Shown here piece after piece: positions 8,995 to 36,829 of a DNA stretch of 64,000 nt. Under the pieces are notes generated by a model, which was given only the letters and a program-made list of their open reading frames with translations, did not search any database and was not told the DNA's origin. The position numbers and the translations under genes are program-made. The stretch is from contig NW_021833079.1 of assembly GCF_006345805.1 (NCBI RefSeq), forward strand, positions 62,001-126,000. The letters are read 5' to 3'. This DNA comes from Octopus sinensis (lineage: Eukaryota). The first letter of the stretch is position 1. Each line of letters opens with the position of its first letter.

Positions 8995-9520
8995 TATTCA
9001 TGACCAAGATGTCATGAGCATATATGATGAGCTTGCCAATCTCCGCCAGGCTCCTTCTAAGTTCTACACACTATAATAGGCAGTTCCCATAGCGAACAAA
9101 AGATTTCTCTCCAGACAGATTTCTCTTCAGTCATCGATAGATCTTCATGCCGGCTTCGGTTACATGAACTCTCTCAAGTAGGTTAGGTGCCACACGGTAT
9201 CGAAAGCTTTTGCGAAATTCAAATAAAACACAGTTACTCAGGCATTCTTACTGTAAGTACGGGATAGTTAATGCTCTAACTCTTTGAAACAGTCTCTTGT
9301 GCATCTTCCTTCTCGGAATCCACATTTACAAATGGGAGCAAATTTTGTGATTATTTAGAAATTGCTTATTTAGATCTTTTCGATTGTTTTAGAGATAAAG
9401 CTAATTGGGAGATAGCTGACAACTAGCAGTGTCGATTTGCTCTGTTTTAGTATCATTCAAATAATCGTATGTTTCCACGCTGCCGAAACGTGTCTAATCG
9501 CCCAAAATAATGGCTCCTCC
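8995..9520 (-). pseudogene. LINE RT fragment
   Basis: WKHTII...SYLPIS...CGFREGRCTRDCFKELE...FAKAFDTVWH...YAHDIL; same family as 45188-46190. Confidence 0.7.
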
Positions 9521-9669: not shown

Positions 9670-10263
9670 TCACTCTATACCAACGATCGTGCTGAAATAC
9701 GAGTTGACACTGCAATCCCTACCGAATCAAAAATTCAATATAACAAGCCGGAAATTTTCCTATACGACAAAAAATTAAACCAGATATGGCTAATAGAGAT
9801 TAGAGTGACGTGTATGGATAATTTAAAAGCAGTTGAAGTTGAAAAACTTCATAAATATGATATTCTGACAGGTGAATTAGTAATAATTTACAAAAGCAAA
9901 GTCAAAATACTTCCGATTGTTATTACCTGGGATGCGATCGCCTCCAAGTATTTAAATATATATATGGATTTGATTGCCATTAAAGACAATGTTCTGGCGT
10001 ACATTCAAACGATTGCATTAAAGAAGACGTTAGAAGGAATGTTCGTAGAATATAAACATGGTTTCAAAGACGTAATGACTAAAGCATTGATTCTCAACAA
10101 AGATTATGCAGTGTGGAACACTTACCAAAGTGGAGCTAACTCGAAGAAGAGGAGACATGATGAGGTGACAAAAACCGAATACTCCGAGGAAGGGAAAATT
10201 AATAGCAAGAGGATCATGAAAAGTGATGGCCCTGTTCAGCGAGGCCCAGGACCAGTAAATTGA
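9670..10263 (+). mobile_element. R4-type RLE endonuclease relic
   Basis: IRVDTAI.TE.KIQYNKPEIFLYDKK...IEIRVTC.DNLKAVEVEKLHKYDIL...ILPIVITWD...ALKKTLE. Confidence 0.8.
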
Positions 10264-11734: not shown

Positions 11735-14517
11735 CTAAGGGAGCATCACTTGGAAATCGTCATCGCTCTTTTCCTCAGTTTTATAATTTCTAGTACCCTC
11801 CACTATTTATTATATTATATACTTACACTCTAGGGAATCAGAGTGACTGGCCGTGAAATTTGATCTTTTTTCGTTACCACTTTGTCCCCTATTAGAACTT
11901 GAGCCTGCAAGTTATTCATATCAGAATACGTTCTTCTTCAGTCCCGACACTGTGACGGTGTAATTTGTTAGCAGAAATTGAGTCCTTGTTATTTTTTATA
12001 TACAAAATAACTCTGCGACGCTGTCTTTCTCTGCATATTTTATCCAATCGACTGGAATATTCTTGAACTTCTGAAGGATCTATTTTCTTGGCAATTTGAA
12101 CAATGTTTGAGAGACCTAGTGGTATGAAAGACGTTAATCACAATCTGTGTTATTTGGAAACTCTTCATGAGCTGTCTTAAGAAGCGAATATGCCTGTTGC
12201 TGGTTCCCCATTTGGAGATAGCAATTTGCTAAGCAGAGATACCAGTGAATTTCTTTTGGACTAATAAACGTTTTAAAAAGGTAAAATGAACTTAATTCGC
12301 AACGCAGTCTCAAAGTAGGATACAGCTCTTTCTGGGAGCTGAGAGTCAATAAAAAAGTCTCCAATCCACTGAACGATTTTTGAGTTGCCTGGATAACATT
12401 TATAAGCCTTAACATTAAGACCAATTAATACGTCCGAATAGTACTGAAATGCATGTGCCCTGTCTCCCCTGGCTTCGTGTATCTCGCCCAACTTTTCCAG
12501 GACTGAGGCGTCGTTGGGTACTATTCCAATTAATTGGATGAACCAGTCTAGAGCGTGGTCGTAATCCTGAACTTGGTAGTATCTATGGTCATAGTTAAGA
12601 ATTATTACATGTCTGCAAGGTGGTAATATACTTGTGGCTCATTCGGGAGTATTCCTCGAAGTTTAAACGCATATTCAATGGCACGATTGTAGTCCTTCTT
12701 GATTTTATATACAATTACTAAATGATTATTTAAAATTTTAAACTTATGTTGAACAGTGCTCCAACACAAAATGGATCGAATTCCTGTGCCGAATGATAAT
12801 ATTTAAGAGCAGTCTCGAGATCTGCGCGTGCAAAATAACAGTTCCCTTTATTGACAAGAGCTGGAATATTGAGGATCAAAATTAAAACTATTTGGATTCA
12901 GCTTGTCAGCTTCTAGTGCAAAATCAGCATATTTTTCTGCTTCTTCAACATCTCCGTTCTATTCAAATGTCATATATAATCAAACCAAAAAATATATGAA
13001 GGATAGATTACAGGATGCCGTCCCAGATGACCTAGGGTCAGATTTTTGAAAAGATTTGAGGATGTCAATTGCCTGGCTTTACATGGGAAAGTAACCTTTG
13101 GAATATTATTCTTTTTTAAGTGGAGAAGTGCGGTGTCAATAACAAGTTCATTCACTAGTCGGTTACTGTTAGAAGTCATTTTGGCCTGCTCAATGCACCT
13201 GAGATAATTCTTTATTGTAAAAACCAATTATATCCTATTTCGTACTCCCGTTCGATGACATTCGAGATTAGTTTGGCTGATCTTTTTATCGATGTCATGT
13301 CTCGTTGTTGGCAGGCGATCTCATACTTTGATAATTCGTCGTTTTTAATGACATTAAGAAGCAACTCCAATTTTTTATCTCCGTTCTAAAATATAATTTT
13401 TGTGTTTCACTGTAAAATAAGATGAATATTTGTCTGCGTCGTTTGATTTATAAAAACTAAGAAGTTGTCGAAAGGCCATTCTTATTCCATCTTTATCTTC
13501 CATTAGGTAATAGCAGATAAGGAGGTTAAATGAAGCTTGTAGATCTTTCTTTTCTAAAATGATGTGCTCAAATGTAGAAATAGCTTCAGCAAGTTGTTCT
13601 ATTGTCATAAAGCTTATTCCAATGTTTATCATTATCCGTTTTCTATCAGGGATTGATTTTTGGTATGTACCTCAACTGTCTGTGATTCTTGGGGATCTGG
13701 TCTAAAGCCATTCGATACATTTTTATTGCATTTCGATAATCTTTCATAGTGAAATAAATATTTCCCATATTTACTCTAAGACGACCTTTTATACCTGACC
13801 AAAAATTTACCTGCAGAAATATATTTCTTGTCACGAACAATGTTGCTATATGTGTTGAGAGCTTCATTGTAAAGTCCATTTGATGTCAATTGGAGAGCCA
13901 AATTAAGATTGACCTGAATCCTCAATATCTAAAAACTCACAGAAAAACTGATGTCAAGATTTTGATCATAATTCTGATCTTGTTCTCTTAATTTTTGGAG
14001 TTGTTTTTCGTATCTAATCGCTTCTCTTGCCTTTTCCAGGGCCTGTTGATAATTTCGTTGTTCGCTTGCATAACAAGAATCCAAAATAAGAGCCTCGATT
14101 TGAAGTTCTTGTTTTTTTATTTTAACATCCAAACTTAAAATTGATTTACTTAGGAAACCTTTCACTGTCTTCCTTTCTCTCTAGTTGGCTTATTGTGTTT
14201 ATTTTTTTCTTCTGACCGTCGGTTGTTGCTAAAATTTTAATTTAGTGGCATGCTGACTTTGATATGAAGACTTGTATCCTGCGCCAGCAATTGCCGTTAT
14301 TGGTCTAGAGTCCGCGTTCATATTTCTAATTGCAGTCATCCTGATTTGCCGTTTTTGAACAGTCTGTTGATTTTTAAAGAATATTTTTAAAAAACGACAG
14401 ATTAATCGATTAAGTTCTTTCATAAAAGTTTAATTAATTCAATTATTTAAATTTTAATACATTTTTTTCCAATTGAAATTCATTTTGTTCTTCAAAGTCG
14501 TAGATATCTTCATACAT
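11735..14517 (-). CDS. IFT88: Intraflagellar transport protein 88 (TPR protein), many mini-introns
   Basis: GRLRVNMGNIYF.MKDYRNAIKMYRMALDQIP, NIGISF..IEQLAEAISTFEHI, ALVNKGNC, LEKLGEIHEARGDRAHAFQYY and WIGDFFIDSQLPERAVSYFE all match IFT88. Start MYEDIYDFEEQ; C-terminal DDDFQVMLP* reached via 22-27-nt introns. Confidence 0.93.
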
Positions 14518-14521
14518 TTAG

Positions 14522-14553
14522 CTTGCTTTGATAACTGATATCTCCTTAGAAAC
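14522..14553. promoter_or_regulatory. X-box-like (RFX) sites upstream of IFT88
   Basis: ATCTCCTTAGAAAC (14540-14553) fits RTHNYY-WT-RRNRAC perfectly; CTTGCTTTGATAAC (14522-14535) has one mismatch. Both lie within 40 bp of the ATG. Confidence 0.55.
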
Positions 14554-15124
14554 AATTCTGAGAATAATCTTTAATTAATTTTTTTTTACTATTAAAACAA
14601 GAAATTAATTTAAAAAAGCCTAACACGTTTAATTAATTTGAGAAAATCTTGAATTGTCTAATTGATTAATTATTCTTGTGCCATTGATCTGCCATAATGA
14701 AGAACCCAAATTTTTCAAAACAAAAAATTGCCACTTAGCCCCCAAAGTCACGCCGGAAGAAATAAGATAATGATTATACAGATCACCTCATCAATTACTC
14801 CACCTCAATAGCTATAGTCGCGGATAACCTCCTTTCCATTGTTCTTTTTTAGTCCACTTACAAATTTTATTACTAAAATTAAAAAAATAATTATTAGACC
14901 ATTAGTTAAGATTGAAATTACTGGGATGGTTAAAATAATCAAATTTAAAATATATATTTTAAATACTCGAAATTACAAATATCGAACAAACTCGGACTCT
15001 TGCTACATATGGTATACCTGTATGCACTTGATCGTCCAAAGTGGTAATTAATATCAACTTTGAAGAATATGTTGCAAATAATCTCATATTTTAGCAAGTA
15101 AAATGTAATTGAATGGATTCTAAA

Positions 15125-16103
15125 ATGCTTGTATATCAGATATTACCATTTTTAACAGTTTTATTAAAAATTGGTAACTTATCAAATATATTTTTAGTCT
15201 CCAGTAGTGGCCAACAAATGATATGCACTAAAATGGAATGCTATTTTAATCCACAAAAAAATATGAATAGAAAGCAAGCTGCTGAATTTTGTCAAAAATA
15301 TGATATGAGTTTGCCATATATAACAACTTCTGATGAAAATAGTTTTCTTCACAGTAAATATATTTATGTTAGTTTAAGATTCGTTTGTGGTAAAATACAA
15401 CACTGATTTGTGGATCGATACAAAACCAAATGTTTATTTTCTGTTTGTTTAAAATAGATGGAATATTCAAATTGGCAAAATGTTAGAGACAAGGATACTT
15501 CCTGTGCTATAATGAACGATTGTGGGAAATGGGAATCTATAGATTGTAACATGGAAAGGGCGGTTGTTTGCAGTTCAAATAGTTTTGCTCATTTCTCATT
15601 GTCTTTAGGAGAAAGAGTTCGATGTAATTGTGGTAGTCAACATTCTAATTATTGCTACTTATATTTCAACGAAAGTTCTACGCTAAAAACAGCCCAAGAA
15701 AAATGTAAGAATATTGGTGGAAAACTTTTGACGATAAAAAATCAGCCAGAAAATAGTTATATTTATGGTTTTATTTGTATCAATATCATATAGGCCAATT
15801 CATGGTGAGCAATGAAAACAATATTATATTAAATATGATGAAGATAGGGACTTCTTTTTTGGAAGAGACGACGAAAGCAAAATTGGTTAAAAATGACTAT
15901 ATTTATCTTAAGTTGTACTATGCATGGGGACGCTATGAGCCGAGAATGTTCAAATGTGTCGAATTAAAGGGGTGTGGATACTGGAAAACTATTCCATGTA
16001 CCTCAAAAAGAAATTATATATGCGAATTTAAAAGTTCATTTGATTATATATGTTTTTAGTTGGAAACGTAACAAGTTGCCATAAAATAAATACGAAAACT
16101 TAA
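15125..16103 (+). CDS. Secreted protein with two C-type lectin domains, paralog 2
   Basis: Same exon-intron layout as 1630-2608 (introns 24, 25, 26, 27, 26, probable 39 and 27, 26 nt); conserved last exon IGNVTSCHKINTKT*. Confidence 0.85.
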
Positions 16104-17063
16104 TCTAACTATTAATAGACACTTTAAAATACTAATAATATAACATTCATACTAACTTCATTAAAACATTATTGAAAACTAAATTTTTTAAATCAATACA
16201 AACAAAGAAATTTTGCCCCTTAAAAAATTGTATTTTTAACTAAAAAAAAGCAAATTTGGAATCAGAGATTGTTAAGAAGAGAATGGATTTTAACTTTTCT
16301 AATAAAAAAAATTGCACTATTATAGGATTTTAAAGAATATTTTCCTCGGGAACCAAAAAATAATATAAACTCAACCTTGTTTTTTTGGTTAAAAAGATCA
16401 TCTAAACACTCCAATTTCGGACAAAAGCTAACTTTTTAGTTTATTTTTTTATAAATCAGTTATTTCACTTTTTCCTTAAATGCTTTGATCTGACTCAGTA
16501 CTATGTTTTTCAATCTCATAATTTATTCATAATTTCATACTGGGCAGTTTTTCATAGATTAGTTACGATTTGGAGTTATAGTTTTTGTTACTTAACAATT
16601 TGATGTAATGTCTTAATACATCCATAAATCCTGCCTTCAATGTAATAAAGTGAACTCTAATTAACCTGAGGGGCCTAATTTGACCTGCGAGGGCTTAAAA
16701 ATGATCCGCAAACGAATTGTATAATAATAAAAAAATGGGCCCGTCTACAAAATGTTCCAACTAACATGACCGATGAGCAAATATATTATCTATTATTAAA
16801 AATTAAATAAAATAATTACACCCCTCGACAAAAAATTTGGTTATTCGATCTTTCCTGCTTTTATTCATTTAAAAACGAATAAATTTTGAAAAAATTGAAC
16901 CGTAAAATTAAGCTAGTATTTAGAGTTTGTGTTAGATCAATAATCTTTTCTGCTCAATGTATTTTTGAATTATTACCGACCCAAAAAAGAAAAATTGTGT
17001 ATAGAAAAAAATTTGAAATAAATATTACTTCAACTCAAATTTGGAAAAGGTAAATTGTGATGT

Positions 17064-20000
17064 TTTTTATTAAGAAAGAAACTAATTAACTAAGTAATTT
17101 TACTAACTAAGTCCAGAGCCTTCGAAGTGAGCAGAAGGCGGCACTCCACGCACCTCCTCCCCTTCTTCCTCCTCTTCTCTGGCACTGTAGACCTTCGAGA
17201 AGGTGCAGTCCAGCGCCTCTTGCTGACTAAACGTCAGGAAAGGGCTGGATCGGCGAGCATCAAACGAGACACTCTCCAGAGTCCTCTTAAAAACAGTTGA
17301 CTGTATATAAGCCTGTAGAGACTTATCTACATCCAACTGTTTTAAGTACCGCTTGTGGTATTTGGTGACCAGTCCATCCCATGTCATCACACACGGGATG
17401 ACATGGACTTTGCACTGGTGCATCAGTCCTAGCTCGTTTGCAAGGAGGTCATACTTCCTTTTTTTCTCCACTTCCACTATCTGCAAACGGTCTAAGCACG
17501 TGATGCCCACCTCCACGATAACAATCTCCCCGGTGACCTTATCGTGGACCACAATGTCGGGTCTGTTGTGCTGGACAACAATCGAGGTGCGTATGGGGGT
17601 ATCCACCTTAATGCACACCCTCGAGTTCTCACACACCGATTGAACTCGATGGGTTCGCAACTTTCTGGACCGCCTCAAGCCGTACTTATTGCAGAGCAAA
17701 AGATGGAGGGACCTCACCACCTCGTTATGCCTCCATGTGTAATCATGGTAAAGCATACTCCCGCACTTCGTGGCTAAATGGTCAACGGTCATTGCCTTAC
17801 TCTTACAGTGGTTACACTGTTTCCGTTGACCATTAAAAAAGTTTCTATCCTGCAAATATGAGAACAACCCTTCTGATCGGGGAGAGTTATTCCCATATTT
17901 CAGCCACGTAGATGACGACGATACGTCAATGTGCGGGTTGTCCAGGCTGCTAAAGAGAGTCTTGTGAAGGACTTTTAAGTTGATCTTTTTAATTAAAGAC
18001 TCCTTTTGAAGTTTGATCAACTCCTTCACATTAACTTGGGTAGCACCTAGACCATACTTAGCCGACACATAGCCTTTTATGGTCCCTAGGTGTGTACCAC
18101 GCGCTTTTTCAGCAGCAAGGATGGCAGCCTTCCTTTGGGATACACTCGACCCACTCCACAAGGTGTCGTGCATCTTAGTAAGAATTCGCTCACTTAAGTG
18201 TACGATGTTACTCAGTCCACGTCCTAGCTGCCCGCGAGACAAGTACAATCTCTCCTTATTGCTTGCCAACACGTGGACATGATTCTCTCGGAGTACTCTT
18301 CGGACAATAAGGTCCATTTCATCGTACTCACTCGGCTCGAATTCGATCAGGCCAACGTAGTAGTTTAGCAATGAGATGGCATACTCGTTCAAGGCATGAA
18401 ATAAGTTCCGTGCATTGAGCCGAGTCTTACATAACATTGCCGCCCTACTACGCACACCCTCCACTACACACTTTCTCGTTTCGGGTGTGATTAATGAGGC
18501 TGGACTCTCAACCACACCAAGATACTTATATCCTTGGTGTTCCTCCAAGACTTTGACTAGGTCACCGCACACAGGGGTGTTAGTCGCCGACTTGTCGTAG
18601 TTGAGCTCCAACCCCACGGCCTTCATGAAACCTTTCAGGACTTTACCCATTGAGTGGAGGATCTCTGAAGACCGAGCGAACAGCTTAATGTCGTCTATGA
18701 ACATGAGATGGTTGGTGCTAAAACACCCTCCTTCATGTTCGATCGACATTTGTTCGAATTGGGCAGTGAGGACTCTACTCAACGGTTCTAGGCAGAGGAC
18801 GAACAGCAGCGGAGACATGCTGTCGCCCTGTAATATGCCCCTCTCTAGTTTCACCTCGCCTATATCGCATTTGTTGTAATTTAGATGCACGTTCCACCTG
18901 TCCATCACAGTTGCAACAAATTTGATAAACCACATTGGCAACTTAAGCCTTCGCAGACACTCAACGAGGTAGGCATGATCAACCGAGTCATATGCCTTCT
19001 TCACATCCACCCACATTGACACTAGTGAGTTTCCGTGGGCTCTCGCGAGGCATTTGTTGATCAGTGCCTGCTCCTTAGCTCCCTGGCAATCCCGCCGAGT
19101 ACCTAACTGGTTCTCGGACAGAATCCCATTCACCTCCACGAAATTTCTGACCTCAGTAGCCACCACCTTAGTCATCAACTTGTACAGGTTGGGCATACAG
19201 GTTATCGGACGATAATCTGTCGGAGCGGAAGGGTTATCTACTTTAGGGATCAAATAAGTGACCCCAGTACATAACCACTCTGGAATCGAGCCAGGGTCTA
19301 GTGTAAACTGTTCGATTGCTCGACACATGCAATCATGGATAGGTTTGCAATTTTTAATAAAGAAATTATACACTTTATCGACCCCAGGTGTCTTCCAGTC
19401 AGAGAGACGGGTTACTGCTTCATCGAACTTCTTGCGGATGTCAGGGACACCACAAGACTCGGTCATCAAGGGAGCATCGGGTCCACAAAACGGAAACGAC
19501 ACACCCTTGCGAGGACGTGCTTTCCACATACTCCCCCATGTGTCAAGCATTTCGGCCTTTTGCTGGGTACCCTCCTTCGTCTCTCCGTGCAACCGACGAT
19601 AGAACGACCTGCGATTAAATTCAAACAGGTTGTTCTCCCGCCTGCGCTGACACCGAGACTCATGAGTTGAGAGCTTCTTCTGATAAACGAGAATCAGCTC
19701 CTCCCTCTCTGCCCGGACACGCCTCAACTCGTTGAGGTCCCATTTGGCAGCTCGTTCCCGACGAAGTAAAGTACGCACCAAGGGGGGAGTCTTGCCCTTG
19801 ACCCCATTGCTCACATTCAAAATGTGCCCAGTCAGCGCTTCCAGCTCGGCTTTCCTTGCGGCTACTTTTGCGGCAATGTTTTCTCTCCATCTACTCTTTG
19901 GGGCAGGCCTCTGAGTGATTTCATCATAGGTTGTCTGTGCCGAGTACAAATAAAGAGAAATCTCGTCCATTGTCTCCGGAGGCTCACGCACGATCGCGTA

Positions 20001-20568
20001 AGCTATGGCACGATTGATGCAACCCATCACGTCACTTCTGAGTTGCCACCGAGGTATCTTTCGGGTCACTCTGCGGTCCGCAAGGGGGACAACACGATTC
20101 GCAGAGATATGCCTACTAAATATCTCCTTAACCTGCAAGAGTAGCGATAACTCACTACTCTGGTGCTCGTGTTGTTCAGAACACGGGGGGCATCCTGACG
20201 GCGTAACCGCAGCGGCAGTCCTCCCCCGCGAGCCAGGAGGAGGGGTCTTGGCCAGCTTCTTCAGTGCATCTAACGATAGGTTCGAGCTAAAGCGTCGATT
20301 GAAACACTGAAGCAGGGTAGGCCACCCATTTCTGGGCATCCTGGAAGCTCTTCCCAACACTTGGGAAAGGGCGGATTTAACCCAGTCCTCCCGGGTCGTG
20401 CACTCGATCCCTTCTGCAATGGCAAAGACGATGTTCTTGCCATCGGACGTCTGTCTCTCCGATGCGGTTGTCCATCCTGCTCTAGGTATATTATTATTAA
20501 TAATATTGTTAGTTTCTTGTTGTCCAGGTAGAGCACACATCGAGATAGTAGCACGTTGCATAACAGAC
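17064..20568 (-). mobile_element. Full-length R4/Dong-type non-LTR retrotransposon
   Basis: 13-bp TSD TAAATTGTGATGT (17051-17063 and 20569-20581), AATAAA plus short A tail, single uninterrupted ORF. Confidence 0.93.
17103..20561 (-). CDS. RT-CCHC-RLE polyprotein, 1152 aa
   Basis: RT motifs YRPITC, KKAYDSV, GILQGDSMSPLLF, NHLMFIDDIKL, YKYLG; R4-like RLYLSRGQLGRGL; CNHC..HLATKC knuckle; PD..E..K endonuclease (RPDIVV..IVEVG..EKKRKY). Confidence 0.95.
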   Translation of the reverse strand: MQRATISMCALPGQQETNNIINNNIPRAGWTTASERQTSDGKNIVFAIAEGIECTTREDWVKSALSQVLGRASRMPRNGWPTLLQCFNRRFSSNLSLDALKKLAKTPPPGSRGRTAAAVTPSGCPPCSEQHEHQSSELSLLLQVKEIFSRHISANRVVPLADRRVTRKIPRWQLRSDVMGCINRAIAYAIVREPPETMDEISLYLYSAQTTYDEITQRPAPKSRWRENIAAKVAARKAELEALTGHILNVSNGVKGKTPPLVRTLLRRERAAKWDLNELRRVRAEREELILVYQKKLSTHESRCQRRRENNLFEFNRRSFYRRLHGETKEGTQQKAEMLDTWGSMWKARPRKGVSFPFCGPDAPLMTESCGVPDIRKKFDEAVTRLSDWKTPGVDKVYNFFIKNCKPIHDCMCRAIEQFTLDPGSIPEWLCTGVTYLIPKVDNPSAPTDYRPITCMPNLYKLMTKVVATEVRNFVEVNGILSENQLGTRRDCQGAKEQALINKCLARAHGNSLVSMWVDVKKAYDSVDHAYLVECLRRLKLPMWFIKFVATVMDRWNVHLNYNKCDIGEVKLERGILQGDSMSPLLFVLCLEPLSRVLTAQFEQMSIEHEGGCFSTNHLMFIDDIKLFARSSEILHSMGKVLKGFMKAVGLELNYDKSATNTPVCGDLVKVLEEHQGYKYLGVVESPASLITPETRKCVVEGVRSRAAMLCKTRLNARNLFHALNEYAISLLNYYVGLIEFEPSEYDEMDLIVRRVLRENHVHVLASNKERLYLSRGQLGRGLSNIVHLSERILTKMHDTLWSGSSVSQRKAAILAAEKARGTHLGTIKGYVSAKYGLGATQVNVKELIKLQKESLIKKINLKVLHKTLFSSLDNPHIDVSSSSTWLKYGNNSPRSEGLFSYLQDRNFFNGQRKQCNHCKSKAMTVDHLATKCGSMLYHDYTWRHNEVVRSLHLLLCNKYGLRRSRKLRTHRVQSVCENSRVCIKVDTPIRTSIVVQHNRPDIVVHDKVTGEIVIVEVGITCLDRLQIVEVEKKRKYDLLANELGLMHQCKVHVIPCVMTWDGLVTKYHKRYLKQLDVDKSLQAYIQSTVFKRTLESVSFDARRSSPFLTFSQQEALDCTFSKVYSAREEEEEGEEVRGVPPSAHFEGSGLS

Positions 20569-21159
20569 TAAATTGTGATGTAATAAGAAATTAGGGAAAG
20601 TCATGGTATGGGGTTGTTTTTCCTATCGTGGGGTATGCAATTTGGTATTTATAGCAAGACGCTTAATTCTGCAAAATATCAATCTATTTTGATCAATAAT
20701 TTGCCACATTCTGCACAAAAAATGAGGTTTGTTGACTATATTTTTCAACATGACAACGCTCTCAGCCATACATCAAAAATTATTATTCAATATTTTTGCG
20801 AAAAACATATTAAAAAAATTAGAATGGCCTTCGCAATCTACGAATTTAAAACCAATAGAGCATTTGTGGGCTTATATGAAGGTTCAAATTAGGCAAAGAA
20901 AAAATAAGAACATTCAGGCACTGAAGGAAAATATATTAAATATTTGGTATTCCTTTCTAACAAAAACACTTGAAAAATTAGTTGGGTCAATGAAAAAAAG
21001 GTGTTGCGAGATCTATTAGGCAAAAAGAGGTTATTTTACATATTAATTTGACAATAACCAAATTTTATGCCAATGAAAGTCGTTGTTTTTTCCAAATTTC
21101 TTAGACAAAATTTCAAAATTTAAATAATTAAATTAATTATTGTCGTATGTCATAGTTCG

Positions 21160-21270
21160 AATCCAAGCCCTAACTATATTTTGACTTTAAACCCTAACAT
21201 CAGCCTAACCTAATTTAAACCCTAACACAAACTCTTATTCTAATTCTAGCCCTAACTGTGGTTCAAATCT
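21160..21270 (+). repeat. Degenerate hexamer tract containing four CCCTAA
   Basis: 6-bp periodic AACCCT/AATTCT/AGCCCT units just inside the Ginger-like TIR. Confidence 0.5.
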
Positions 21271-22068
21271 TATTACAAATAAACAAGTGTCCCAAGACTA
21301 ATTTGACTCACTGTATGATCCCGACCTTAACACTAATCCTTTCCTGAACGCAAACTCCAACTGATTATGTTTTTTTGTATTCACGTTGTTATCAAAATCA
21401 GATTTGATAAAAACAGTATCGCCGATTTTTATATGCGTTTTTTAAAAATTTTTATTGGCGTTTTCTTTTACTTTTTTCGGTAATTTTTTAAATGCTCCGA
21501 CGTTTGATAATCTGATTCAATTTGAATTTCATCCTCCGATGAATACTCCGTTCTTTCGAATGATGATTCGATTTCTTTATTATCAAACAAAGAAACAGTA
21601 TTGAATCCCAAAGTTCCAAAAAATAATCTAAAAATAAAATTTACGAAGCAACCTAAAAGGTGATTTTTCGGTAGCACGATAAATAGTCGTGTTGTATTTA
21701 TAGACAGTATTCTTCAAAATATCAATCCAATATTGGATCGGATTGAATATTGTTTTTGCTAACCAACGCTTTAGCTTTGATTATATCGTTCTACCCTGCC
21801 TTGTGATTGAGGGTGTCTTGGTCTTCCATGAATCGTCTTTATCCCCCAATCACGTAATAAAAATGAAACTTCAGAGTTACAACAACTCTTTCCCTTATCC
21901 GTGGTAAGGTTTCAGGTGGCCCAACTGAGTTAAACAGTCTTCAAAAGAATTCTTTATTTTGAGAAGTTTTACTCATAGGGAAATGGACCATGCAAATTTT
22001 GACCTAACAATCAATTTATTAGAACCATTTATTTCTCTATATTAGAGCATATCTCCGAGGATCTATAC

Positions 22069-24127
22069 CAGTGATTCTCAAGTGCGGCCCCTGGGGCCGC
22101 ATGCGGCCCCTAGGATTTAATTTGCGGCCCCTAGGTTTTATAAATGTTTTATTTTTTAATTTAATATTTTTAAATTTTATGAATAAAAAAATGTCACGTT
22201 TTTATTTGTTGTTGTGATGTCTGAATTCTAAACGTTGTCGAAAACTTTCCGAGGAAAATAGGATTTTTCAACACATCTGGGAAGAAATATTTCATTATTG
22301 AGATCAATGGAAAGGCTCTTGCCTAATATGCCATTCTATTATTGCAACTCTAAAACGTATACAATCGAACGGCACTACCGTTTCCACTCTATTCTTTATG
22401 ACAAATTCACTGGTGTTTCTCGGACGAAAAAACTAAAACAAATGAAAGAAGATTATTTAAAACGATCATTTACTCTTTCAAAAGTGGCACATATTCGTCT
22501 AATATTAACCTGGCATCATACAAAATTAGTTACCTATTGGCTAAAAATATGAAGCCTTATTCTGATGGCGAATTATATAAAACGGCAATCGAAATATTTG
22601 CATCGGAATGTTGTTCGCCCGCTGTTTTCGATATTGCACACAAGTTACCTCTAAGTACGATACTGTTACTAGAGAGTCAGTGATATATCTGATAATCTGA
22701 TTAACGAACTTTTACAGTATGCAATTGTTTTTGTAATTTTTAGAATTTGTAAAGATTTTCAATATTATTCTTTTGCGCTTGATTGTTCCAAAGATATTCA
22801 GATATCGAACAATTAGTAGTGTTTATAAGGGGAGTAACATCTGACTTTCGAGTATACGAAGAATTTTTTTCATTGAATTCACTTCACGGAGAAACTAAAG
22901 GAACACAGATTTTTTCTCCAATTGTGAAATTAATTGAAGATTATCACTGGATCCAAAAAAATTAGTTTCATTTCAACTGATGGAGCCCCTTATATGATTG
23001 GCAGTAAAACTGGTTTTCGTGGACGTATGAATAAATGGAGGTGTGATAATAACTGGACTCCAGTATTATGGCATCATTGCATATTCATCAGGAAAACCTA
23101 ATTTCCAAAAATTTAAAATGGAAATGTTTCTGAAGTAGTGATAAAAATTGTCAATTGGATTCGGGCGAACGCCTTGAATCACCGAAAATTTAAAACATTT
23201 TTAACTGAAACCGATTCGGATTATGGCGATGTCCTTCTTTTCTCAGTAGTAAGATGGTTAAGCCGTAGCTCTTGTCTCAAAAGGTTAATTTCTTATATTT
23301 AGATTTTATCAACTTCTCCCTGAATTATTTTATTCACTGAAAATAAAGTGGACAATGCATTATTGAAAGACAATAGATGGGTAGCAGATTTAGCATTTTA
23401 TGTGGATCTATCGGTGCATCTGTCTGCCCTAAATGTCGAACTACAAGGGGAAAAAAGCTAAATTATCAAATTTATGGATATATAAATGCCTTCGTTAAGA
23501 AATTAATTTTATGGAAAGCGCAGATATCAAATAATGATTACACACATTTTCCTTATTTGTCAGAAAATTCCGAAAGTGGCTCAACTGATAAATATTTAAA
23601 AATAATTGAAGATTTAAATTTGCAATTTGATGCAAGATTTCAGGTTTTTAGTATTTAATTTAAGCTGACAGAGCTTTAAAGAAGGTGCAAATTCAATGAG
23701 ATTATTTGCATCTCCATTAATTATGAAAAGTGAGGAGGTTTCCGGGATTTACCAACTGGAATTGATTGATTTGCAAAATGATGTTGAACTGAAAAGTTTG
23801 TTCAACAACATTTCAATAATTGACTTTTATTCGAGAATTCCAGAGAACCGATTTCCGAATTTAGTCAATAATGCAAAGAAAAATTTAGCAATGTTTGGAT
23901 CAACATATGTCTGCGAATCGACATTTAGTAAACTCGTTCGAATTAAAACAAAGTTTCGCAGCAGATTGACTGATACTCATCTGAGTGATTTGTTACGTAC
24001 TTCAAAAGTAGAATTAAACCTAATTTTGATTATTTGGTTAATAAATAATTCTTAAAAATTATTGCGGCCCCCTGTAAATTTTTTTTTTAATTTGCGGCCC
24101 CTGAGCAAAAAAGCTTGAGAATCACTG
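22069..24127 (+). mobile_element. hAT transposon (Buster/SPIN/GTF2IRD2-like) with intron-containing transposase
   Basis: TIR CAGTGATTCTCAAG, 8-bp TSD ATCTATAC (22061-22068 / 24128-24135), subterminal GCGGCCCC repeats. Motifs FALD, STDGAP.MIG, HCI.HQENL, VRWLSR, FGSTYVCESTFSKL..IKTKFRSRLTD. Confidence 0.93.
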
Positions 24128-24203
24128 ATCTATACAATCCGCCACAAATCTTTCGAATTTATGTGAAACGGTAATCATTTAAATATCTTCGCATGTCTTT
24201 AGA

Positions 24204-24631
24204 CAGTGATTCTCAAGCTTTTTTATATGTGCCACTTTTGAAAGTAAATGATCGTTTTAAATATCTTCTTTCATTTGTTTTTATTTTTTTCGTCCGAGAA
24301 ACACCAGTGAATTTGTCATAAAGAATAGAGTGGAACGTTAGTGCCGTTCGATTGTATACGTTTTTAGAGTTGCAATAATAGAATGGCATATTAGGCAAAG
24401 AGCCTTTCCATTGATCTCAATAATGAAATATTTTTCTTCCCAGATGTGTTGAAAAATCCTATTTTCTCGGAAAGTTTTCGACAACGTTTAGAATCAGACA
24501 TCACAACAACAAATAAAAAACGTGACATTTTTTTATTCATAAAATTTAAAAATATTAAATTAAAAAATAAAACATTTATAAAACCTAGGGGCCGCAAATT
24601 AAATCCTAGGGGCCGCACTTGAGAATCACTG
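24204..24631 (-). mobile_element. Non-autonomous 428-bp deletion derivative of the adjacent hAT
   Basis: Same TIRs; left ~400 bp of the 22069 element joined to its last ~20 bp; TSD CTTTAGA(C) at 24197-24203 / 24632-24639. Confidence 0.9.
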
Positions 24632-25399
24632 CTTTAGACTGTTGAAATGGTTGCAAGAATCACAAGTTGATATAAAATGGCGAATAACTTTTTAATTTAT
24701 ACCAATATATTTTTGGGAAATTAAATGGCACATCTTGGAAACTCAAGGATGTCCGATAGAATGTTCTTTAGTTAAAATTGAATTGATTTCGGATTCTTGA
24801 AAGGAACAGACAACAGTACGAAAGTTTCCATTAAGTGCAAGAATTAATTCTCCATTTATAAGTTTTAAATTCTGACACTTTCGGCGTAGCGTACGCTTTT
24901 GATTTTCATTGAAATCATTAGGATACTCATTATATTCGAAGTAGTTCATTATGTTCTTTAATTCATAGGCCGTATTAATGCTGAACGAAGAAGGCATTAC
25001 AAAAATCAAATTTAAAATTTAAATTAAAAAAATAATTAAAAAATTAAAAACAGCTTTATTGACTCAAAATATATCAGATTTATCAGTTAAAAAAAGTATT
25101 CAAAAATATTATAATTAGTATTTTCAAGTGATCAGTCGTTCTCATCAGCCCGGACACTATCAACAACCCGGACGCTATGACATACGACAATTATTTTCAA
25201 TTTTATCAGATTTTAAAATATATCGGAAGAAAACATTAAATCATTCTTTGTATAAATTCAGTAAGTTGAAGATTCACCAATATTTATGTCTAGGGGTGTA
25301 TGTGTGGTGAATTTGAATTTCGAATTGCCCCAAAAGAATTAAAGATCTTCAAACCCATACGTTTAATTCTGATTGAACTCATAAATATCTCTTTATTGT

Positions 25400-28300
25400 T
25401 TAACCTATATTCTTAATATGCTTCAAAAAGTTGCTGTCCAAAAATTTTATAACACCAAGCGACACTATGAAATTCGTCGTTACGAAAAATTTAAAAAGCT
25501 TACAAGAGAATCTCGCTTAAAGGAAATTAGGAGTCTCGAAAAAAATTACCGAAAGCAAACAACATTTTTTAAATAATTTGTGTTGTAAAATAGATGATAC
25601 TACACGTACAAATTACGAAATTTGGGGAACAAATGAAACCAATTTCAAAAACAGAATTTATAAAAGAATGCTTTCCGAAGTAGCTGAAAATCTATTCCCG
25701 AAAGGTTTTTTTCAAATACAGGAAAATGTCATAACTTTTCGTGAGGAAATATGATGGTTTATATTTCCGAAATACTATTAATATCTCAAAATGAGACATT
25801 TTGGTAGACATAAAATCACATCTAAATGACTTTTTTTTTTTTAATTTCAAAACCTTTGTTATGAAAGCAAGAAAGAAATTAAAGATAGCTAAGTTAATTA
25901 AAGGCCTTACGAGACACCCGACCAGCCTCGCGAATGGCGAAGCCGTTCCCTCGGATCACAGCAATCGACAGACGTTCCAGGAGCCAAGAAAACTCTCTTG
26001 GATCGTGACTAGTCCTTGAAATCCGTCGACCGAGCGAGCGAAGGAAGCGGAGTGTCTTGGGACCGAAGATCCCGGAGGACTCCACGGCAATTGGAGTAAA
26101 GAGCAGCGAGTTGGAGAGGTGGCCGTACTTGAGAATCTTTCGCTCCTCGGCCTGCCTGGAAGCGTGCCCAGGATTGGCGGCGGACAGAGCGAGATTTCCC
26201 AGCGAGAACGTGTCCGAGCAGGTAGAATCCCAAATAAGGGATTTCCCCTGCTCGTAGGGGAAGGTGGACATGCCGTCAGGGCGTTTGCCATCCCCTCTAT
26301 CCAATCCAACAGGTTCAAGGATTGACGGGATGCCTGCTGAAGCGAGGGCTCTCTGTATGACTGAGTTGAGTTCACTGTGACGGGGGGCACGACCGGCACT
26401 CCGCCGGCAAGCGAGGGGATGCAAACCGTACTCGTCAACAGTTCCCCCACAACGGCATTTGTGCGTCTGGCAGATTTTCAGCCCGACACGGAGGGAGATT
26501 GCAATTCTTAGGCATTCCTTGTCCAACAGGTTCCCGATGGAAGGGAGAGGGAGAGCCTTTAACCAGACACCGCTGCCTTCACAGCGACCTGCACGGAGGC
26601 AAGCGACACGGTGTTGATTGGAGACAGGAAGCAGGCCTTCGAAGATTGCCTGACAAGAGATTTCGTCCCATTGACGCTGTGAAAATTGAGAATTGGGCAG
26701 CTTCGAACCAAACCGAGCCTCCCACCGACCACGGGGCTGCAGAGTAAACTTCAGACAATTTCCGTTCGGGGAGGTTTCTAAGAACGATGTCTGAGAGAGT
26801 ACGAGAAGCGTGATGAGCGGATAGGAATGCCGGGAGGGCAAGATCGGAATAGGATCTCAAGCCAAGGCCGCCCCAGCGCACAGGCAGGGATGCCTGAGTC
26901 CAGCCTGGATCGTCGAAAGCCAGATTGCAAAGAGAGCTCGTACCGAGCCTGAGGATATTGTCAAGGTCGGAAAGAAGGTCGTCTCTTTGAAAGCAGGGTG
27001 CGCATCTTAGGGTGTAAAGGATCTTAGGGACGGAAAAGTGGTTTCGGAGGAGGAAAAGAGCCACATGAGGCTCTATGACTTTAAGCTTGTCGATCATTTT
27101 GGATAAGTGGGAAATTTTTCCAGCGAGTGAGCATTCGAGGGCAGAAGGCCCCATAGGGGCACCGAGGATCGTAAGATTTGATTTGTCCGTAATCCGGACA
27201 TCTGAGAGAATGCCTCGGCACGTGGAAATTGAAACAGTGAAGTCACTCGGATTTAAGGCAATGTTCACGATTTCGGATTTATCGGCGTTTATAGATAGGC
27301 CGATGTCCGAGAGGGAAGGGAGGATAGAACGAAGGTCGTCAAAAACAGCATCGGGGGGACCACAAATGGTTGCGTCATCCAGATACCATATGTTAACTGG
27401 GGATCGAACAGAGTGAGCGATACTGTTAACGCCCAAGGCAAAAAGGACAGGACCCAGGGGATCTCCCTGTTGGACCCCGGTGGCCGAAGAAATAGGTATA
27501 TCGTTGAACATAAGGATACTTGAGGAAGCATAAGAGAGATGCACAAGGGGATAGGCGAAAGGGACTAATTCACGACAGCACTCCAGAAGGTGGTCCCGCC
27601 TGATGGAATTGAATGCGTTGGAAACGTCCAATTTGACCATAATAAACTGCTCAAATGATTCAGTTAAGTCACGAATTGAGTGGACAGCAGCTTCGCAGCC
27701 GTTAGGAACGCCGACCCCGAGTTGGACAGGCAGAAACTTCGAGGACAAGCAGGGAACAATGGCTCGACACAGAAGTTTAGCGGAGAGCCTCCGGAAAATA
27801 TTGCCCACGGCGATGGGCCTCACGCCGTTGTCCTTTTTCCAAGGGCAGTAAGGTTGGCGGAAAAGAAAATATCACGAGCAAAATCGGGGAGGGAACCGGA
27901 GATGAAGCGGTTGCACAGGTTGGTGATTGAGCGTAGGAGTTTTCGACCAGCTTCGGCGGTAGTGGGAGACGTCAGGTCTTTCAGATGACCTGGTCTCAGA
28001 CAATCTACACCACCACTGCTTCCAGGTGAAAAGTCCCTCAGGGCTTTCAGTACAAGAGTTTCCGAGACAGCAAAAGGATTGAGAGCGAGGAGGGTGTCAG
28101 GGGACGGCTGAGGCCTGAAGTCGTTTGGCTGAGGGGGATGTTTTTCCCTGAGGAATTAAAACAGCAGGGGTCGTGGGCAAAAGGGGACTTGTCGAGGCAA
28201 CCAGCCTAACTGCACCACGAACGTCCCGTCCAAGAGTTTACTATTAATCTTTCTGTTGAGGTAATCGACGTCATTCGCGTGAGAGGACACATTATGGGAT

Positions 28301-29350
28301 GGTGAACCAGAGGGAAATTTGGAGCTAGCGAGGTGGTCCCGCAGCCAGCGGATGGAAAAAAAGTTCTTATCATACAAGGCCAATTCTTGTTTGACGGTTG
28401 TAGCCAGCGAGATGGAGGAGGTTTTCACACGGGCTCTTAATGGGGCAAAACCGAGACCGAAAGAGGCGAAGCAAAACAGCTTAAGCCAATCGGAATGGCA
28501 TCAGATGCCAAAGCCTTATCGATTGCGGCGGACAAGGAGGAGGCTGCAAAGATACGCGCAGCTTTTGGGATTCTGGATGGGATTTTCCGGAGACGGCGGA
28601 AGAGCTTGATAGATTTGAGAACTTCCTCGGCAGACGGAGATGTTGCGAGTGGCGCTTTTTCGGGGAGTTCTTGCGGGCTGGAACACTGAACCGGCTGGCA
28701 AGTGCGGCAGGAAGGACAGTCCCAAATTAAGAGAGAGGCAGAAACGCGCCTGGAAAGACGCACGCAAGAAAGGTGGAAGAATCTGTCGCAACTAGAACAG
28801 ACTCTCCCTTTCTAAATGACTTAAACTTGAAACTGCAAGGAAGTAATAAATTAATAAACCAAATGTATACCGAAATAACTACTTTTGAAAATAAATTTGA
28901 GTTGTAGGAATTACAGTTACAAAAAGGAAATATGACGTATTTTGTGAATTTTCTTTCTACGAATCCGACTGATGGCCCGGAATATACGAATTAAGATCAG
29001 AATTTTCATCACGTTTTATGGATTTAAGAGTAAAATACTTATATATAATTTTTTAGGTTCATAAAAATCTTTTCAACATTTTCCAATCTCATTTGATGTT
29101 GAAACTGAGACAGTACCAGGTTGTTATAAAATGGAATTACTTTAAAGTCAATGCGACACTAAACTTAAATCAAAATATTTTTCTGAATTGGTAATTTTGA
29201 GTTTCTAAAAAATTTTGTATGTGTTAAAAAATATCACAATTAACCGACAATGCTAATATTTGGAAACACATTTTTATATCAACAATTATTCTCCACTATG
29301 AATAATGTAAAAAATTGTCTGAGAACGAAAATTACCGATTTACATTTTAA
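25400..29350 (+). pseudogene. Second hAT (SPIN-like) transposase relic, split by CRE copy A1
   Basis: Removing the CRE and one TSD restores LVDIKSHLNDLNLKLQGSNKLINQMY; also YNTKRHYE and QLFSTMNNVKNCLRTKITDLHL. Confidence 0.7.
25833..28810 (-). mobile_element. CRE-clade non-LTR retrotransposon, family A copy 1 (5'-truncated inside the PHD finger)
   Basis: 12-bp TSD TCTAAATGACTT (25821-25832 / 28811-28822) and poly(A). RT motifs RPIAVG, LDVSNAFNS, VQQGDPLGP, WYLDD; zinc knuckle C.C...HPLAC; RLE KRPDG...WD..AVE. Confidence 0.92.
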
Positions 29351-35913: not shown

Positions 35914-36129
35914 AAGATAGGACTTACTCTCGTATGGGATGTATTCGGTGTCGACTCGTTTTCTTCGTCATCGCTCATGGACTCTGTTTCTCGCCCTAGA
36001 TCTGCCTCCGCTCATGCTGAAACTAAGAAAGGTGTTACACTCGTTGCTTTTCAAATAAAATGTTGACCCAGCCACGTCCTCGAGTGGTCATCTAAAAGAA
36101 GCAACTGTCCACGGAGTTAGGCATTGTAC

Positions 36130-36700: not shown

Positions 36701-36829
36701 GATGCTCAGAAAGTTTTAAACAGATTGAAAATCAAAAGAATCTTTTTAAAAATAGTTTTTATGATATAAGTCTATAAAATCTACAACTAACTGCCTTAAG
36801 TAACCGTTTCGGTACTTTGAAACAAGTTC

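What the first reader, a model, noticed from the sequence alone, without database searches (positions are those of the whole stretch)
17050..20594. Intact 3.5-kb retrotransposon sits inside a 27-nt intron of a Tc1 transposase
Seen: removing the R4 element and one copy of its 13-bp TSD leaves GTAAATTGTGATGTAATAAGAAATTAG (27 nt, GT..AG, in-frame TGA). Splicing it out gives AAA TTT GGA AAA GGG AAA GTC ATG GTA TGG = KFGKGKVMVW, the Tc1 motif. The other Tc1 (46986-49529) has no intron here. Inference: either chance, or this RLE endonuclease prefers intron-like AT-rich sequence. An antisense insertion in a mini-intron tests whether this spliceosome can still handle multi-kb introns.
Basis: partly seen in the sequence, partly recalled or inferred. 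Interest (0 to 1): 0.8.

Follow-up and report, generated by a model that had tools for sequence, protein, structure and literature searches.

The report
Young LINE inside dead Tc1's mini-intron
A recently active 3.5-kb retrotransposon has landed in a 27-base intron-like segment of an already dead Tc1 transposon copy, in what is almost certainly dicyemid parasite DNA mislabelled as octopus. This is an ordinary nested insertion, not a test of splicing.

Summary
A 3505-bp non-LTR retrotransposon lies at 17064-20568 on the minus strand. It has one intact 1152-aa ORF and is flanked by a perfect 13-bp duplication, TAAATTGTGATGT. Removing the element and one duplicate leaves a 27-nt GT..AG segment, and removing that segment restores KFGKGKVMVW.

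A second copy of the same Tc1 family on another contig (L009) carries this 27-nt segment uninterrupted, 26 of 27 bases identical. This proves the empty site and shows the segment is a family feature. The genome has 23-27-nt introns: seven were verified in a zinc-transporter gene in the window. The intron reading is therefore well supported, but no RNA data were available.

The host Tc1 copy is dead:
- It lacks about 445 nt of N-terminal coding sequence.
- It has three private frameshifts.
- It has lost the first catalytic Asp.
- It is about 10% diverged from its paralog, while the retrotransposon copies differ by about 0.1-2%.

Nothing needs to be spliced here.

Eight insertion sites share no motif. 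None of the other seven lies in a recognisable intron. The sites are AT-richer than background (P about 0.001).

The protein is an R2-like LINE with a restriction-like endonuclease. The label "R4" could not be tested, and its lack of site specificity argues against that label. The contig comes from the Octopus sinensis assembly but looks like Dicyema DNA.

The parts
16819..25298 (+). Host Tc1/mariner element: a dead copy carrying nested insertions. It is flanked by TA at 16817-16818 and 25299-25300.
   Evidence: The terminal repeats are TACACCCCTCGACAAAAAATTTGGT on the left and, in reverse complement on the right, TACACCCCTAGACATAAATATTGGT; 21 of 25 bases match. The left end, the coding part and the right-end segment 25189-25240 all align with the L009 paralog. 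Pfam finds DDE_3 in the conceptual protein.
16890..17049 (+). Remnant of the Tc1 transposase upstream of the 27-nt segment (..IIFSAQCIFELLPTQKRKIVYRKKFEINITST / KFGKG). It carries a private 2-nt deletion, and the first catalytic Asp is lost.
   Evidence: Translations are. The alignment to L009 (FPDECIF, NITPTVKFEKG) is. About 445 nt of N-terminal coding sequence present in L009 16972-16525 is missing here.
17050..17063 (+). 5' part of the 27-nt GT..AG intron-like segment (GTAAATTGTGATGT). Bases 17051-17063 are the left copy of the target-site duplication.
   Evidence: The paralog has the same bases uninterrupted.
17064..20568 (-). Full-length non-LTR retrotransposon (3505 bp) with a restriction-like endonuclease. 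It lies antisense to the Tc1.
   Evidence: Seven full-length copies at 97.9-99.9% identity lie on different contigs with the same termini. It has a short A tail and a 13-bp duplication.
17103..20561 (-). Single intact ORF of 1152 aa. The reverse transcriptase is at residues 438-683 (18513-19250). The CCHC knuckle is at residues 916-933 (17763-17816). The restriction-like endonuclease core is at about residues 975-1060 (17382-17639).
   Evidence: Pfam RVT_1, E 3e-30. C916, C919, H928, C933, P1001, D1002, E1017, K1033, K1036 and Y1037 are conserved in at least 90% of a 31-sequence alignment. The AlphaFold model has pLDDT 83. The best structural matches are R2 retrotransposon proteins, E 5e-31, TM 0.56-0.70.
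20569..20581 (+). Right copy of the 13-bp target-site duplication TAAATTGTGATGT.
20582..20594 (+). 3' part of the 27-nt intron-like segment (AATAAGAAATTAG).
   Evidence: The paralog reads AATAAAAAATTAG.
20595..21019 (+). Remnant of the Tc1 transposase downstream of the segment (GKVMVWGCFSYRGVCNLVFIARRL.. QHDNALSH.. LEWPSQSTNLKPIEHLW.. to the stop). It has two private 1-nt frameshifts.
   Evidence: L009 is in frame at both places.
21142..25188 (.). A further nested insertion of about 4 kb in the same Tc1. Its termini are GTCGTATGTCATA / TATGACATACGAC, and it is flanked by AATTATT. It contains a hAT-like unit at 22102-24617 with 102-nt perfect inverted repeats.
   Evidence: (Dimer_Tnp_hAT in ORF 23696-24055). 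L009 is continuous across this point.

Best explanation
The region is a pile of nested transposons in AT-rich, repeat-rich DNA. That DNA is almost certainly from a dicyemid parasite of the octopus.

An old Tc1/mariner copy spans 16819-25298. It had already lost its N-terminal coding region and its reading frame. A member of a currently or very recently active LINE family then inserted into it.

The LINE encodes one protein with a reverse transcriptase, a CCHC knuckle and a C-terminal restriction-like endonuclease, as R2 does. It most likely inserted by target-primed reverse transcription (inferred):
- The endonuclease nicked the window's plus strand between 17063 and the next base of the empty site (GATGT^AATAAG).
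- The freed 3' end primed copying of the element RNA from its short A tail.
- A second nick 13 bp away on the other strand produced the 13-bp duplication.

The insertion point lies within a 27-nt GT..AG segment that the ancestor of this Tc1 family already carried. That segment is most likely a genuine mini-intron of the once-active transposase gene.

That the LINE hit this segment is best explained by chance, combined with the element's preference for AT-rich DNA. The insertion has no consequence for splicing, because this Tc1 copy no longer encodes anything.
For: **Shown.**
- Element boundaries, the duplication and the intact ORF.
- The empty site, seen in the L009 paralog with the 27-nt segment 26/27 identical.
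- A clean 27-column gap at this position in two other Tc1 lineages of the same genome.
- Seven GT..AG introns of 23-27 nt in the window's zinc-transporter gene. Their removal yields complete Cation_efflux and ZT_dimer domains.
- Published Dicyema figures: median intron 27 bp (PMC6543705); GC 36.7%, 49% repeats, host Octopus sinensis (PMC6736024).
- The window copy's frameshifts and N-terminal deletion are private. L009 is intact at each of those places.
- LINE copies are 97.9-99.9% identical, and 3 of 7 have intact ORFs. The Tc1 paralogs are 84-94% identical block by block.
- Insertion sites: duplications of 8-15 bp at five of eight sites, extra bases at some 5' junctions, and no common target sequence.
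- Sites are AT-rich: mean GC 21% against 32-35% at random positions, P about 0.001.
- R2-type architecture.

**Inferred.**
- The order of nicks and the priming step.
- That the 27-nt segment was spliced in the active ancestor.
Against: - No RNA data were available, so splicing of the 27-nt segment has never been seen.
- Only two copies of this Tc1 family could be recovered. A shared defective ancestor cannot be excluded. The stretch just upstream (KIVYRK..NITPTVKF) is damaged in both copies in different ways, so its ancestral state is unknown.
- Only eight LINE sites were examined. The AT bias could reflect selection against insertions in genes rather than enzyme preference.
- Three of the eight sites show no clear duplication.
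Confidence: 0.8

Rival explanations
1. The 27-nt segment is not an intron. It is an in-frame insertion that arose once in a non-autonomous Tc1 lineage and was spread when an intron-less master element mobilised that lineage in trans. Its GT..AG ends are coincidental.
For: - Both copies that carry it are pseudogenes.
- Every other Tc1 examined lacks it: two other lineages in this genome, and the nearest database protein, P0083, reads GGGKIMVWGCF continuously.
- No RNA evidence exists.
- The region about 10 codons upstream is damaged in both copies.
Against: - Boundaries GTA..TAG, flanked by AAG| and |G.
- The length equals the genome's median intron length (PMC6543705) and lies within the 23-27 nt of verified local introns.
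- Removal restores the most conserved Tc1 motif exactly.
- It has an in-frame TGA.
- From base composition, the chance that a random 27-nt insertion has GT..AG ends is under 1% (my estimate).
- The identifiable frame-breaking lesions are private to one copy or the other, which implies a largely intact common ancestor.
Confidence: 0.2
2. The endonuclease of this LINE recognises mini-introns or 5' splice-site-like sequence, so the location is targeted.
For: - In the window copy, one of the two inferred nicks falls inside the GT of the segment.
- Insertion sites are AT-rich, as mini-introns are.
Against: - The other seven sites show no GT..AG context, no flanking open frames and no shared motif.
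- From the figures in PMC6736024 (5012 genes, 6.2 introns per gene, 38 bp mean, 67.5 Mb), introns make up about 1.7% of the genome. With at least 18 annotated copies, one intron hit has roughly a one-in-four chance under random insertion.
Confidence: 0.05
3. The junctions are an assembly artefact: a repeat copy was placed wrongly into the contig.
For: The element is a high-identity repeat in a draft assembly, and such repeats are often misassembled.
Against: - The flanks carry a perfect 13-bp duplication.
- When joined, the flanks reproduce base for base the uninterrupted sequence of an independent paralog.
- The termini are the same as in six other full-length copies.
Confidence: 0.02

Closest known systems
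R2 elements (e.g. Bombyx mori R2; PDB 8gh6, 9nl3, 9nl2)
   Same: - It has a single ORF, with a reverse transcriptase followed by a linker, a CX2CX8HX4C knuckle and a C-terminal PD..E..K endonuclease.
- The best sequence and fold matches in the PDB are R2 proteins.
- The 3' junctions are precise and the 5' junctions are variable.
   Different: - It is not inserted in 28S rDNA; eight different targets were seen.
- Pfam detects no N-terminal zinc-finger or Myb motifs.
- RT identity to R2 proteins is only about 14-18%.
R4 / Dong clade
   Same: It is a LINE with a restriction-like endonuclease and a single ORF, and its 3' end is A/TAA-rich (..TTAATAA(A)n).
   Different: From my own knowledge and PMC4640811, R4 is specific for large-subunit rDNA and Dong for (TAA)n. 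This element is not site-specific. No R4 or Dong sequence appeared in either protein search, so clade membership is untested.
HERO clade of restriction-like-endonuclease LINEs
   Same: According to PMC4640811, HERO is the clade that contains many elements without target specificity. This element behaves that way.
   Different: No HERO reference sequence was available, so no phylogeny was made.
Tc1 and Tc3 of Caenorhabditis elegans (transposase genes with a short intron; from my own knowledge, not checked here)
   Same: It is a Tc1/mariner transposase gene interrupted by one short spliceosomal intron.
   Different: The intron position differs. Here the segment is 27 nt, in a genome where that is the usual intron size, and it lies between the two Gly/Lys codons of the ..KxGxG|KVMVWGCF motif.
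Ordinary nested transposon insertions
   Same: A young element has inserted into an old dead one. The same Tc1 copy carries a second 4-kb insertion. The L003 LINE copy also sits inside a Tc1 of another family.
   Different: Nothing essential differs.

Membership tests
LINE with restriction-like endonuclease (R2-type, early-branching non-LTR retrotransposons) | Single ORF with a reverse transcriptase domain | tested here: met
   There is one 1152-aa ORF. Pfam RVT_1 matches at E 3e-30, residues 438-683.
LINE with restriction-like endonuclease (R2-type, early-branching non-LTR retrotransposons) | CCHC knuckle CX2-3CX7-8HX4C downstream of the RT (spacing from PMC5678591) | tested here: met
   The motif is CNHCKSKAMTVDHLATKC, i.e. 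CX2CX8HX4C. C916, C919, H928 and C933 are conserved in at least 90% of 31 relatives.
LINE with restriction-like endonuclease (R2-type, early-branching non-LTR retrotransposons) | C-terminal PD-(D/E)xK-type endonuclease | tested here: met
   P1001, D1002, E1017, K1033, K1036 and Y1037 are nearly invariant. The full-length model aligns over 870-1170 columns with R2 proteins, E 5e-31. Catalysis was not tested.
LINE with restriction-like endonuclease (R2-type, early-branching non-LTR retrotransposons) | No apurinic-type endonuclease domain | tested here: met
   Pfam finds only RVT_1, with no Exo_endo_phos.
LINE with restriction-like endonuclease (R2-type, early-branching non-LTR retrotransposons) | N-terminal zinc-finger/Myb DNA-binding motifs | tested here: not met
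   There is no Pfam hit in residues 1-437. The model shows only helices there, with residues 1-39 and 107-134 disordered.
R4 clade | RT groups with R4/Dong in a phylogeny | not testable with these tools
   No R4 or Dong reference sequence was obtainable. None appeared among the hits.
R4 clade | Target specificity (rDNA for R4, (TAA)n for Dong) | tested here: not met
   The eight insertion sites have unrelated target sequences. Only L008 abuts an (AAT)n run.
HERO clade | RT groups with HERO in a phylogeny | not testable with these tools
   No reference sequences were available.
Tc1/mariner DNA transposon (host element) | Terminal inverted repeats flanked by a TA duplication | tested here: met
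   The termini are TA|CACCCCTCGACA.. and ..TGTCTAGGGGTG|TA, with 21/25 matching.
Tc1/mariner DNA transposon (host element) | DDE transposase with DD34E spacing | tested here: met
   Pfam DDE_3 matches the conceptual protein. Counting on the translation gives 34 residues between the D of QHDNA and the E of PIEHLW. The first D is mutated in this copy and present in L009.
Dicyemid-type spliceosomal mini-intron | GT..AG ends and a length in the genome's narrow intron range | tested here: met
   The segment is 27 nt, GTAAAT..ATTAG. Local verified introns are 23-27 nt. The published median is 27 bp (PMC6543705).
Dicyemid-type spliceosomal mini-intron | Removal restores the frame and a conserved protein motif, and the segment itself cannot be read through | tested here: met
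   Removal restores KFGKG|KVMVWGCF. There is an in-frame TGA at 17058-17060. Other Tc1 lineages have a 27-column gap here.
Dicyemid-type spliceosomal mini-intron | Present in independent copies of the gene | tested here: met
   The L009 paralog carries it, 26/27 identical. Only two copies were available.
Dicyemid-type spliceosomal mini-intron | Spliced in RNA | not testable with these tools
   No transcript data were reachable.

The most novel reading that the evidence does not exclude
The 27-nt segment is a genuine spliceosomal mini-intron that a Tc1 transposase gene gained within the dicyemid lineage, and every copy of that transposon family carries it. This would be a datable intron gain inside a mobile element, in one of the two animal groups with the shortest known introns. 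The family's copies would then serve as natural reporters for what this minimal splicing machinery recognises.
Probability: 0.6. Interest if true: 0.4.

Novelty: new member of a known kind. Interest (0 to 1): 0.3.

Why it matters
The insertion as such matters little: young elements landing in dead ones are routine, and this one has no functional consequence. Three by-products have some value.

1. A Tc1 transposase gene that appears to carry a 27-nt intron is a small, checkable case of intron gain in a genome with extreme intron miniaturisation.
2. The LINE family is young. Copies are about 98-99.9% identical and several ORFs are intact. It is not site-specific, which is unusual among LINEs with restriction-like endonucleases. 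Its nearest named relatives are in microsporidia.
3. Large contigs of the Octopus sinensis reference assembly, and RefSeq proteins named as octopus proteins, appear to be dicyemid DNA. Users of that annotation should know this.

Tried and rejected
- **Exact look-up of the 1152-aa protein.** It is not on record. The RefSeq model for this locus is a truncated 792-aa version.
- **Unsupervised intron scans.** One looked for GT..AG segments joining open frames; the other tabulated the length distribution of GTAA..TAG. Neither gave a signal above controls, because genes are sparse in these repeat-rich loci. I replaced them with hand-checked introns in one conserved gene, validated with Pfam.
- **Protein search with the conceptual Tc1 C-terminus.** The best hits were 40-52% identical, mostly fish Tc1, so no close family member is annotated anywhere. 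The paralog was found instead by DNA search in flanks fetched for other LINE copies.
- **Exact-pattern scan of metagenome contigs for the 27-nt junction.** No match.
- **Rfam scan of the element for a 5' self-cleaving ribozyme.** The ORF starts only 8 nt from the 5' end, which prompted the scan. It returned only two chance-level hits.
- **Profile search to reach named R4, Dong or HERO relatives.** None were reached.
- **Recent horizontal arrival of the LINE, suggested by its 49% GC in a background of about 30% GC.** The window holds five older, diverged, AT-richer relics of related elements, so the superfamily is a long-term resident.
Full report
**1. What is in the sequence**

- The plus strand reads ..AAATTTGGAAAAG (to 17049), then GTAAATTGTGATGT (17050-17063).
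- A GC-richer block follows at 17064-20568.
- After it come TAAATTGTGATGT (20569-20581), AATAAGAAATTAG (20582-20594) and GGAAAGTCATGGTATGG.
- The block is about 45-50% GC in a background of about 30% GC.
- On the minus strand the block holds one uninterrupted ORF of 1152 aa, at 17103-20561. Pfam finds a reverse transcriptase domain in it.
- In its own orientation the element begins GTCTGTTATG, so the ORF's ATG is the eighth base. It ends ..TTTCTTAATAAAAA.
- Removing the block and one 13-bp repeat leaves GTAAATTGTGATGTAATAAGAAATTAG: 27 nt, GT..AG, with an in-frame TGA.
- Removing that segment too gives KFGKGKVMVWGCFSY.., the conserved Tc1 motif.

**2. Where the window comes from**

The ORF's best database match, at 100% identity, is a RefSeq protein named as Octopus sinensis. 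It lies on contig VCDQ01007963.1 of assembly GCA_006345805.1.

The DNA does not look like octopus DNA. A zinc-transporter gene in the window (56640-57859, minus strand) is interrupted by seven GT..AG segments of 24, 25, 27, 23, 24, 23 and 27 nt. Removing them gives a protein with a complete Cation_efflux domain (profile positions 1-198 of 198) and a ZT_dimer domain.

Among animals, introns this short are reported only from dicyemids and some myxozoans (PMC13644364). The published figures for Dicyema fit:
- The median intron is 27 bp (PMC6543705).
- Dicyema japonicum has 36.7% GC and 49% repeats, and it was collected from Octopus sinensis (PMC6736024).

I conclude, with about 90% confidence, that the contig is dicyemid DNA carried into the octopus assembly. 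This is inference; no dicyemid reference sequence was compared.

**3. The retrotransposon**

*Copies.* The RefSeq cluster of this protein has 18 members on many contigs. I fetched eight further loci.
- Seven full-length copies, the window's included, are 97.9-99.9% identical. Three have the intact 1152-aa ORF.
- One copy is 5'-truncated (L009).
- One is an internal fragment (L007).

*Protein.*
- Downstream of the reverse transcriptase lies CNHCKSKAMTVDHLATKC. This is CX2CX8HX4C, the spacing given for these LINEs in PMC5678591.
- After that come RPD.., ..E-V.. and K..KY.
- In an alignment with 30 relatives, these residues are conserved in at least 90% of sequences.
- An AlphaFold model built from that alignment is confident: mean pLDDT 83, pTM 0.77.
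- Its best matches in the PDB are the R2 retrotransposon proteins of zebra finch, turtle and silkworm (E 5e-31 to 6e-29, TM 0.56-0.70). They rank ahead of human LINE-1 ORF2p. Sequence search gives the same order.
- No apurinic-type endonuclease and no N-terminal zinc finger or Myb motif were detected.

The element is therefore an R2-type LINE with a restriction-like endonuclease.

*Clade.* I could not test the label 'R4', because no R4, Dong or HERO reference was reachable. Named relatives are confined to other 'octopus' contigs, to microsporidia (Hamiltosporidium, Enteropsectra), and to a few records flagged or likely to be contaminants.

**4. Insertion sites**

| Locus | Duplication (element orientation) | Extra bases at 5' junction |
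|---|---|---|
| Window (L001) | ACATCACAATTTA (13 bp) | none |
| L003 | TCGGAATCTACT (12 bp) | 2 |
| L004 | TTTGTATTA (9 bp) | 6 |
| L006 | GACTCGAT (8 bp) | about 12 |
| L009 | TGTTTACAACATGTA (15 bp) | 1 |
| L002, L005, L008 | none clear | not applicable |

- The targets share no motif, so the element is not site-specific. According to PMC4640811, that is typical of the HERO clade and not of R2, R4, NeSL or CRE.
- A 40-nt window centred on each site has a mean GC of 21%, against 32-35% for random positions in the same loci (P about 0.001).
- No site other than the window's has a recognisable exon-intron context.
- Two of the eight copies lie inside Tc1-type elements of different families: the window's, and L003's, whose Tc1 ends are at 8443 and 13297. 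With half the genome repetitive, I attach no weight to this.

**5. The host Tc1**

*Extent.*
- The left end is TA|CACCCCTCGACAAAAAATTTGGT at 16817.
- A matching inverted end lies at 25298, with 21 of 25 bases matching.
- The element is therefore 16819-25298.
- Besides the LINE, it contains a second nested insertion at 21142-25188, with its own 13-bp inverted ends and a hAT-like unit.

*The paralog.* A paralog in L009 (about 14005-17217, minus strand, on a different contig) aligns with the window copy in blocks of 84-94% identity. It settles three points.
- It reads ..AAATTTGAAAAAG GTAAATTGTGATGTAATAAAAAATTAG GGAAAATCATGG.. without interruption. The reconstructed empty site and the 13-bp duplication are therefore real.
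- The 27-nt segment was already present in the common ancestor of the two copies.
- The window copy's defects are private:
  - a deletion of about 445 nt that removes the N-terminal DNA-binding region, which L009 retains;
  - a 2-nt deletion just before KFGKG;
  - a 1-nt deletion after VFIA;
  - a 1-nt insertion in an A run before LEWPSQ;
  - loss of the first catalytic Asp (FSAQC against FPDEC).

L009 has its own, different defects: a nested Tc1-like element with a TA duplication, a 12-nt deletion in QHDN, and E to K in PIEHLW.

*Comparison with other Tc1 lineages.* Two other Tc1 lineages in this genome show a clean 27-column gap at the position. They are at window 46985-49530 and at L003. 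The nearest database protein is also continuous there.

**6. Is the 27-nt segment an intron?**

In favour:
- The ends are GTA..TAG, with AAG| before and |G after.
- The length is exactly the genome's median intron length.
- There is an in-frame stop, so the segment cannot be read through.
- Removal restores an invariant motif exactly.
- It is present in two independent copies whose other lesions are not shared.

Against:
- There are no RNA data.
- Only two copies were found.
- The few codons upstream are damaged in both copies, so a defective common ancestor cannot be ruled out.

I put the intron reading at about 0.75-0.8, and the 'lineage-specific insertion in a non-autonomous subfamily' reading at about 0.2.

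**7. Does the location mean anything?**

The Tc1 paralogs differ by roughly 10%. The LINE copies differ by about 0.1-2%. The LINE therefore arrived long after this Tc1 copy had decayed. Nothing here needs to be spliced, so the insertion is not a natural test of whether the dicyemid spliceosome tolerates a 3.5-kb intron.

From the figures in PMC6736024, introns make up about 1.7% of the genome. With 18 or more copies, one landing in an intron-like segment is unremarkable, the more so for an element that favours AT-rich DNA. Chance, helped by AT preference, is the best explanation.

**8. Verdict**

- The intron reading is supported but unproven.
- The functional speculation is not supported.
- This is a new member of known kinds: an R2-type LINE without site specificity, nested in a dead Tc1.
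- Two modest side interests remain: a probable transposon-borne mini-intron, and a mislabelled parasite contig in a reference assembly.

Noticed in passing
whole window; contig VCDQ01007963.1 of GCA_006345805.1: The window, and at least nine other contigs of the Octopus sinensis assembly (up to 1.29 Mb), look like dicyemid parasite DNA. They have about 30-37% GC and introns of 23-27 nt. Their genes are nevertheless in RefSeq as Octopus sinensis proteins (XP_0296...).
   Followed up: partly
window 56640-57859 (-): A zinc transporter (cation diffusion facilitator) gene has seven GT..AG introns of 23-27 nt. The spliced product has complete Cation_efflux and ZT_dimer domains.
   Followed up: yes
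window 21142-25188, with 22102-24617 inside it: A second nested insertion of about 4 kb lies in the same Tc1. It has 13-bp inverted ends and an AATTATT duplication. Inside it is a unit with 102-nt perfect inverted repeats and an ORF carrying a hAT dimerisation domain (23696-24055). Several CCCTAAC-like motifs occur at 21170-21260.
   Followed up: partly
window 25854-28813 and 32993-35916; 29818-32403: Two nearly identical GC-rich retroelement copies lie in inverted orientation, with arms up to 607 nt at 100% identity. They flank a third related element. Their ORFs have RVT_1 and a C-terminal ..KRPDG..WD.T.. motif, which suggests another LINE family with a restriction-like endonuclease.
   Followed up: no
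window 9670-10041, 36085-36744, 43898-45055, 58508-59157, 61371-62552: These are old, diverged relics (30-65% amino-acid identity) of LINEs related to the young element. Their GC is lower (27-44%). The superfamily is a long-term resident whose dead copies drift towards the genome's AT richness.
   Followed up: partly
window 46985-49530 (-), insertion about 47420-48290: The second Tc1 copy is also a pseudogene (TGG to TGA in VMVW). It carries a nested element of about 850 bp with GC-rich inverted ends (..TGTCGCGAGCGCAGCGAGC.. / ..GCTCGCGCTCGCGACA..). The same kind of end abuts the LINE fragment in L007.
   Followed up: no
L003 8441-13309: Another full-length LINE copy sits inside a Tc1 of a different, fish-like family (ends CAGTGGGGCAAAAAAG). 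It lies about 65 nt upstream of the transposase ATG. That Tc1 has an uninterrupted N-terminal ORF and no intron at the GGG|SIMLWGCF position.
   Followed up: partly
L009 14341-16163: The Tc1 paralog is itself interrupted by a Tc1/mariner-like element of about 1.8 kb. That element has ends CAGTGAATCCTCGCAAATTGGCC and a TA duplication.
   Followed up: no
window 1500-2600 and 15000-16030: A C-type lectin gene is duplicated 13.5 kb apart, at 78-85% nucleotide identity.
   Followed up: no
protein hits: Outside the 'octopus' contigs, the named relatives of this LINE are microsporidia (Hamiltosporidium, Enteropsectra) and records that look like contaminants: a 'Candidatus Riesia' MAG and a louse contig flagged UNVERIFIED_CONTAM. 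Many unnamed metagenome contigs of 3.5-4.5 kb also match. The distribution is patchy and biased towards parasites.
   Followed up: no
L002 about 9400-9460: Thirty bases upstream of the L002 copy, a 12-nt stretch (TGTTATGCAACG) repeats the element's own 5' end. No duplication is recognisable at that site.
   Followed up: no
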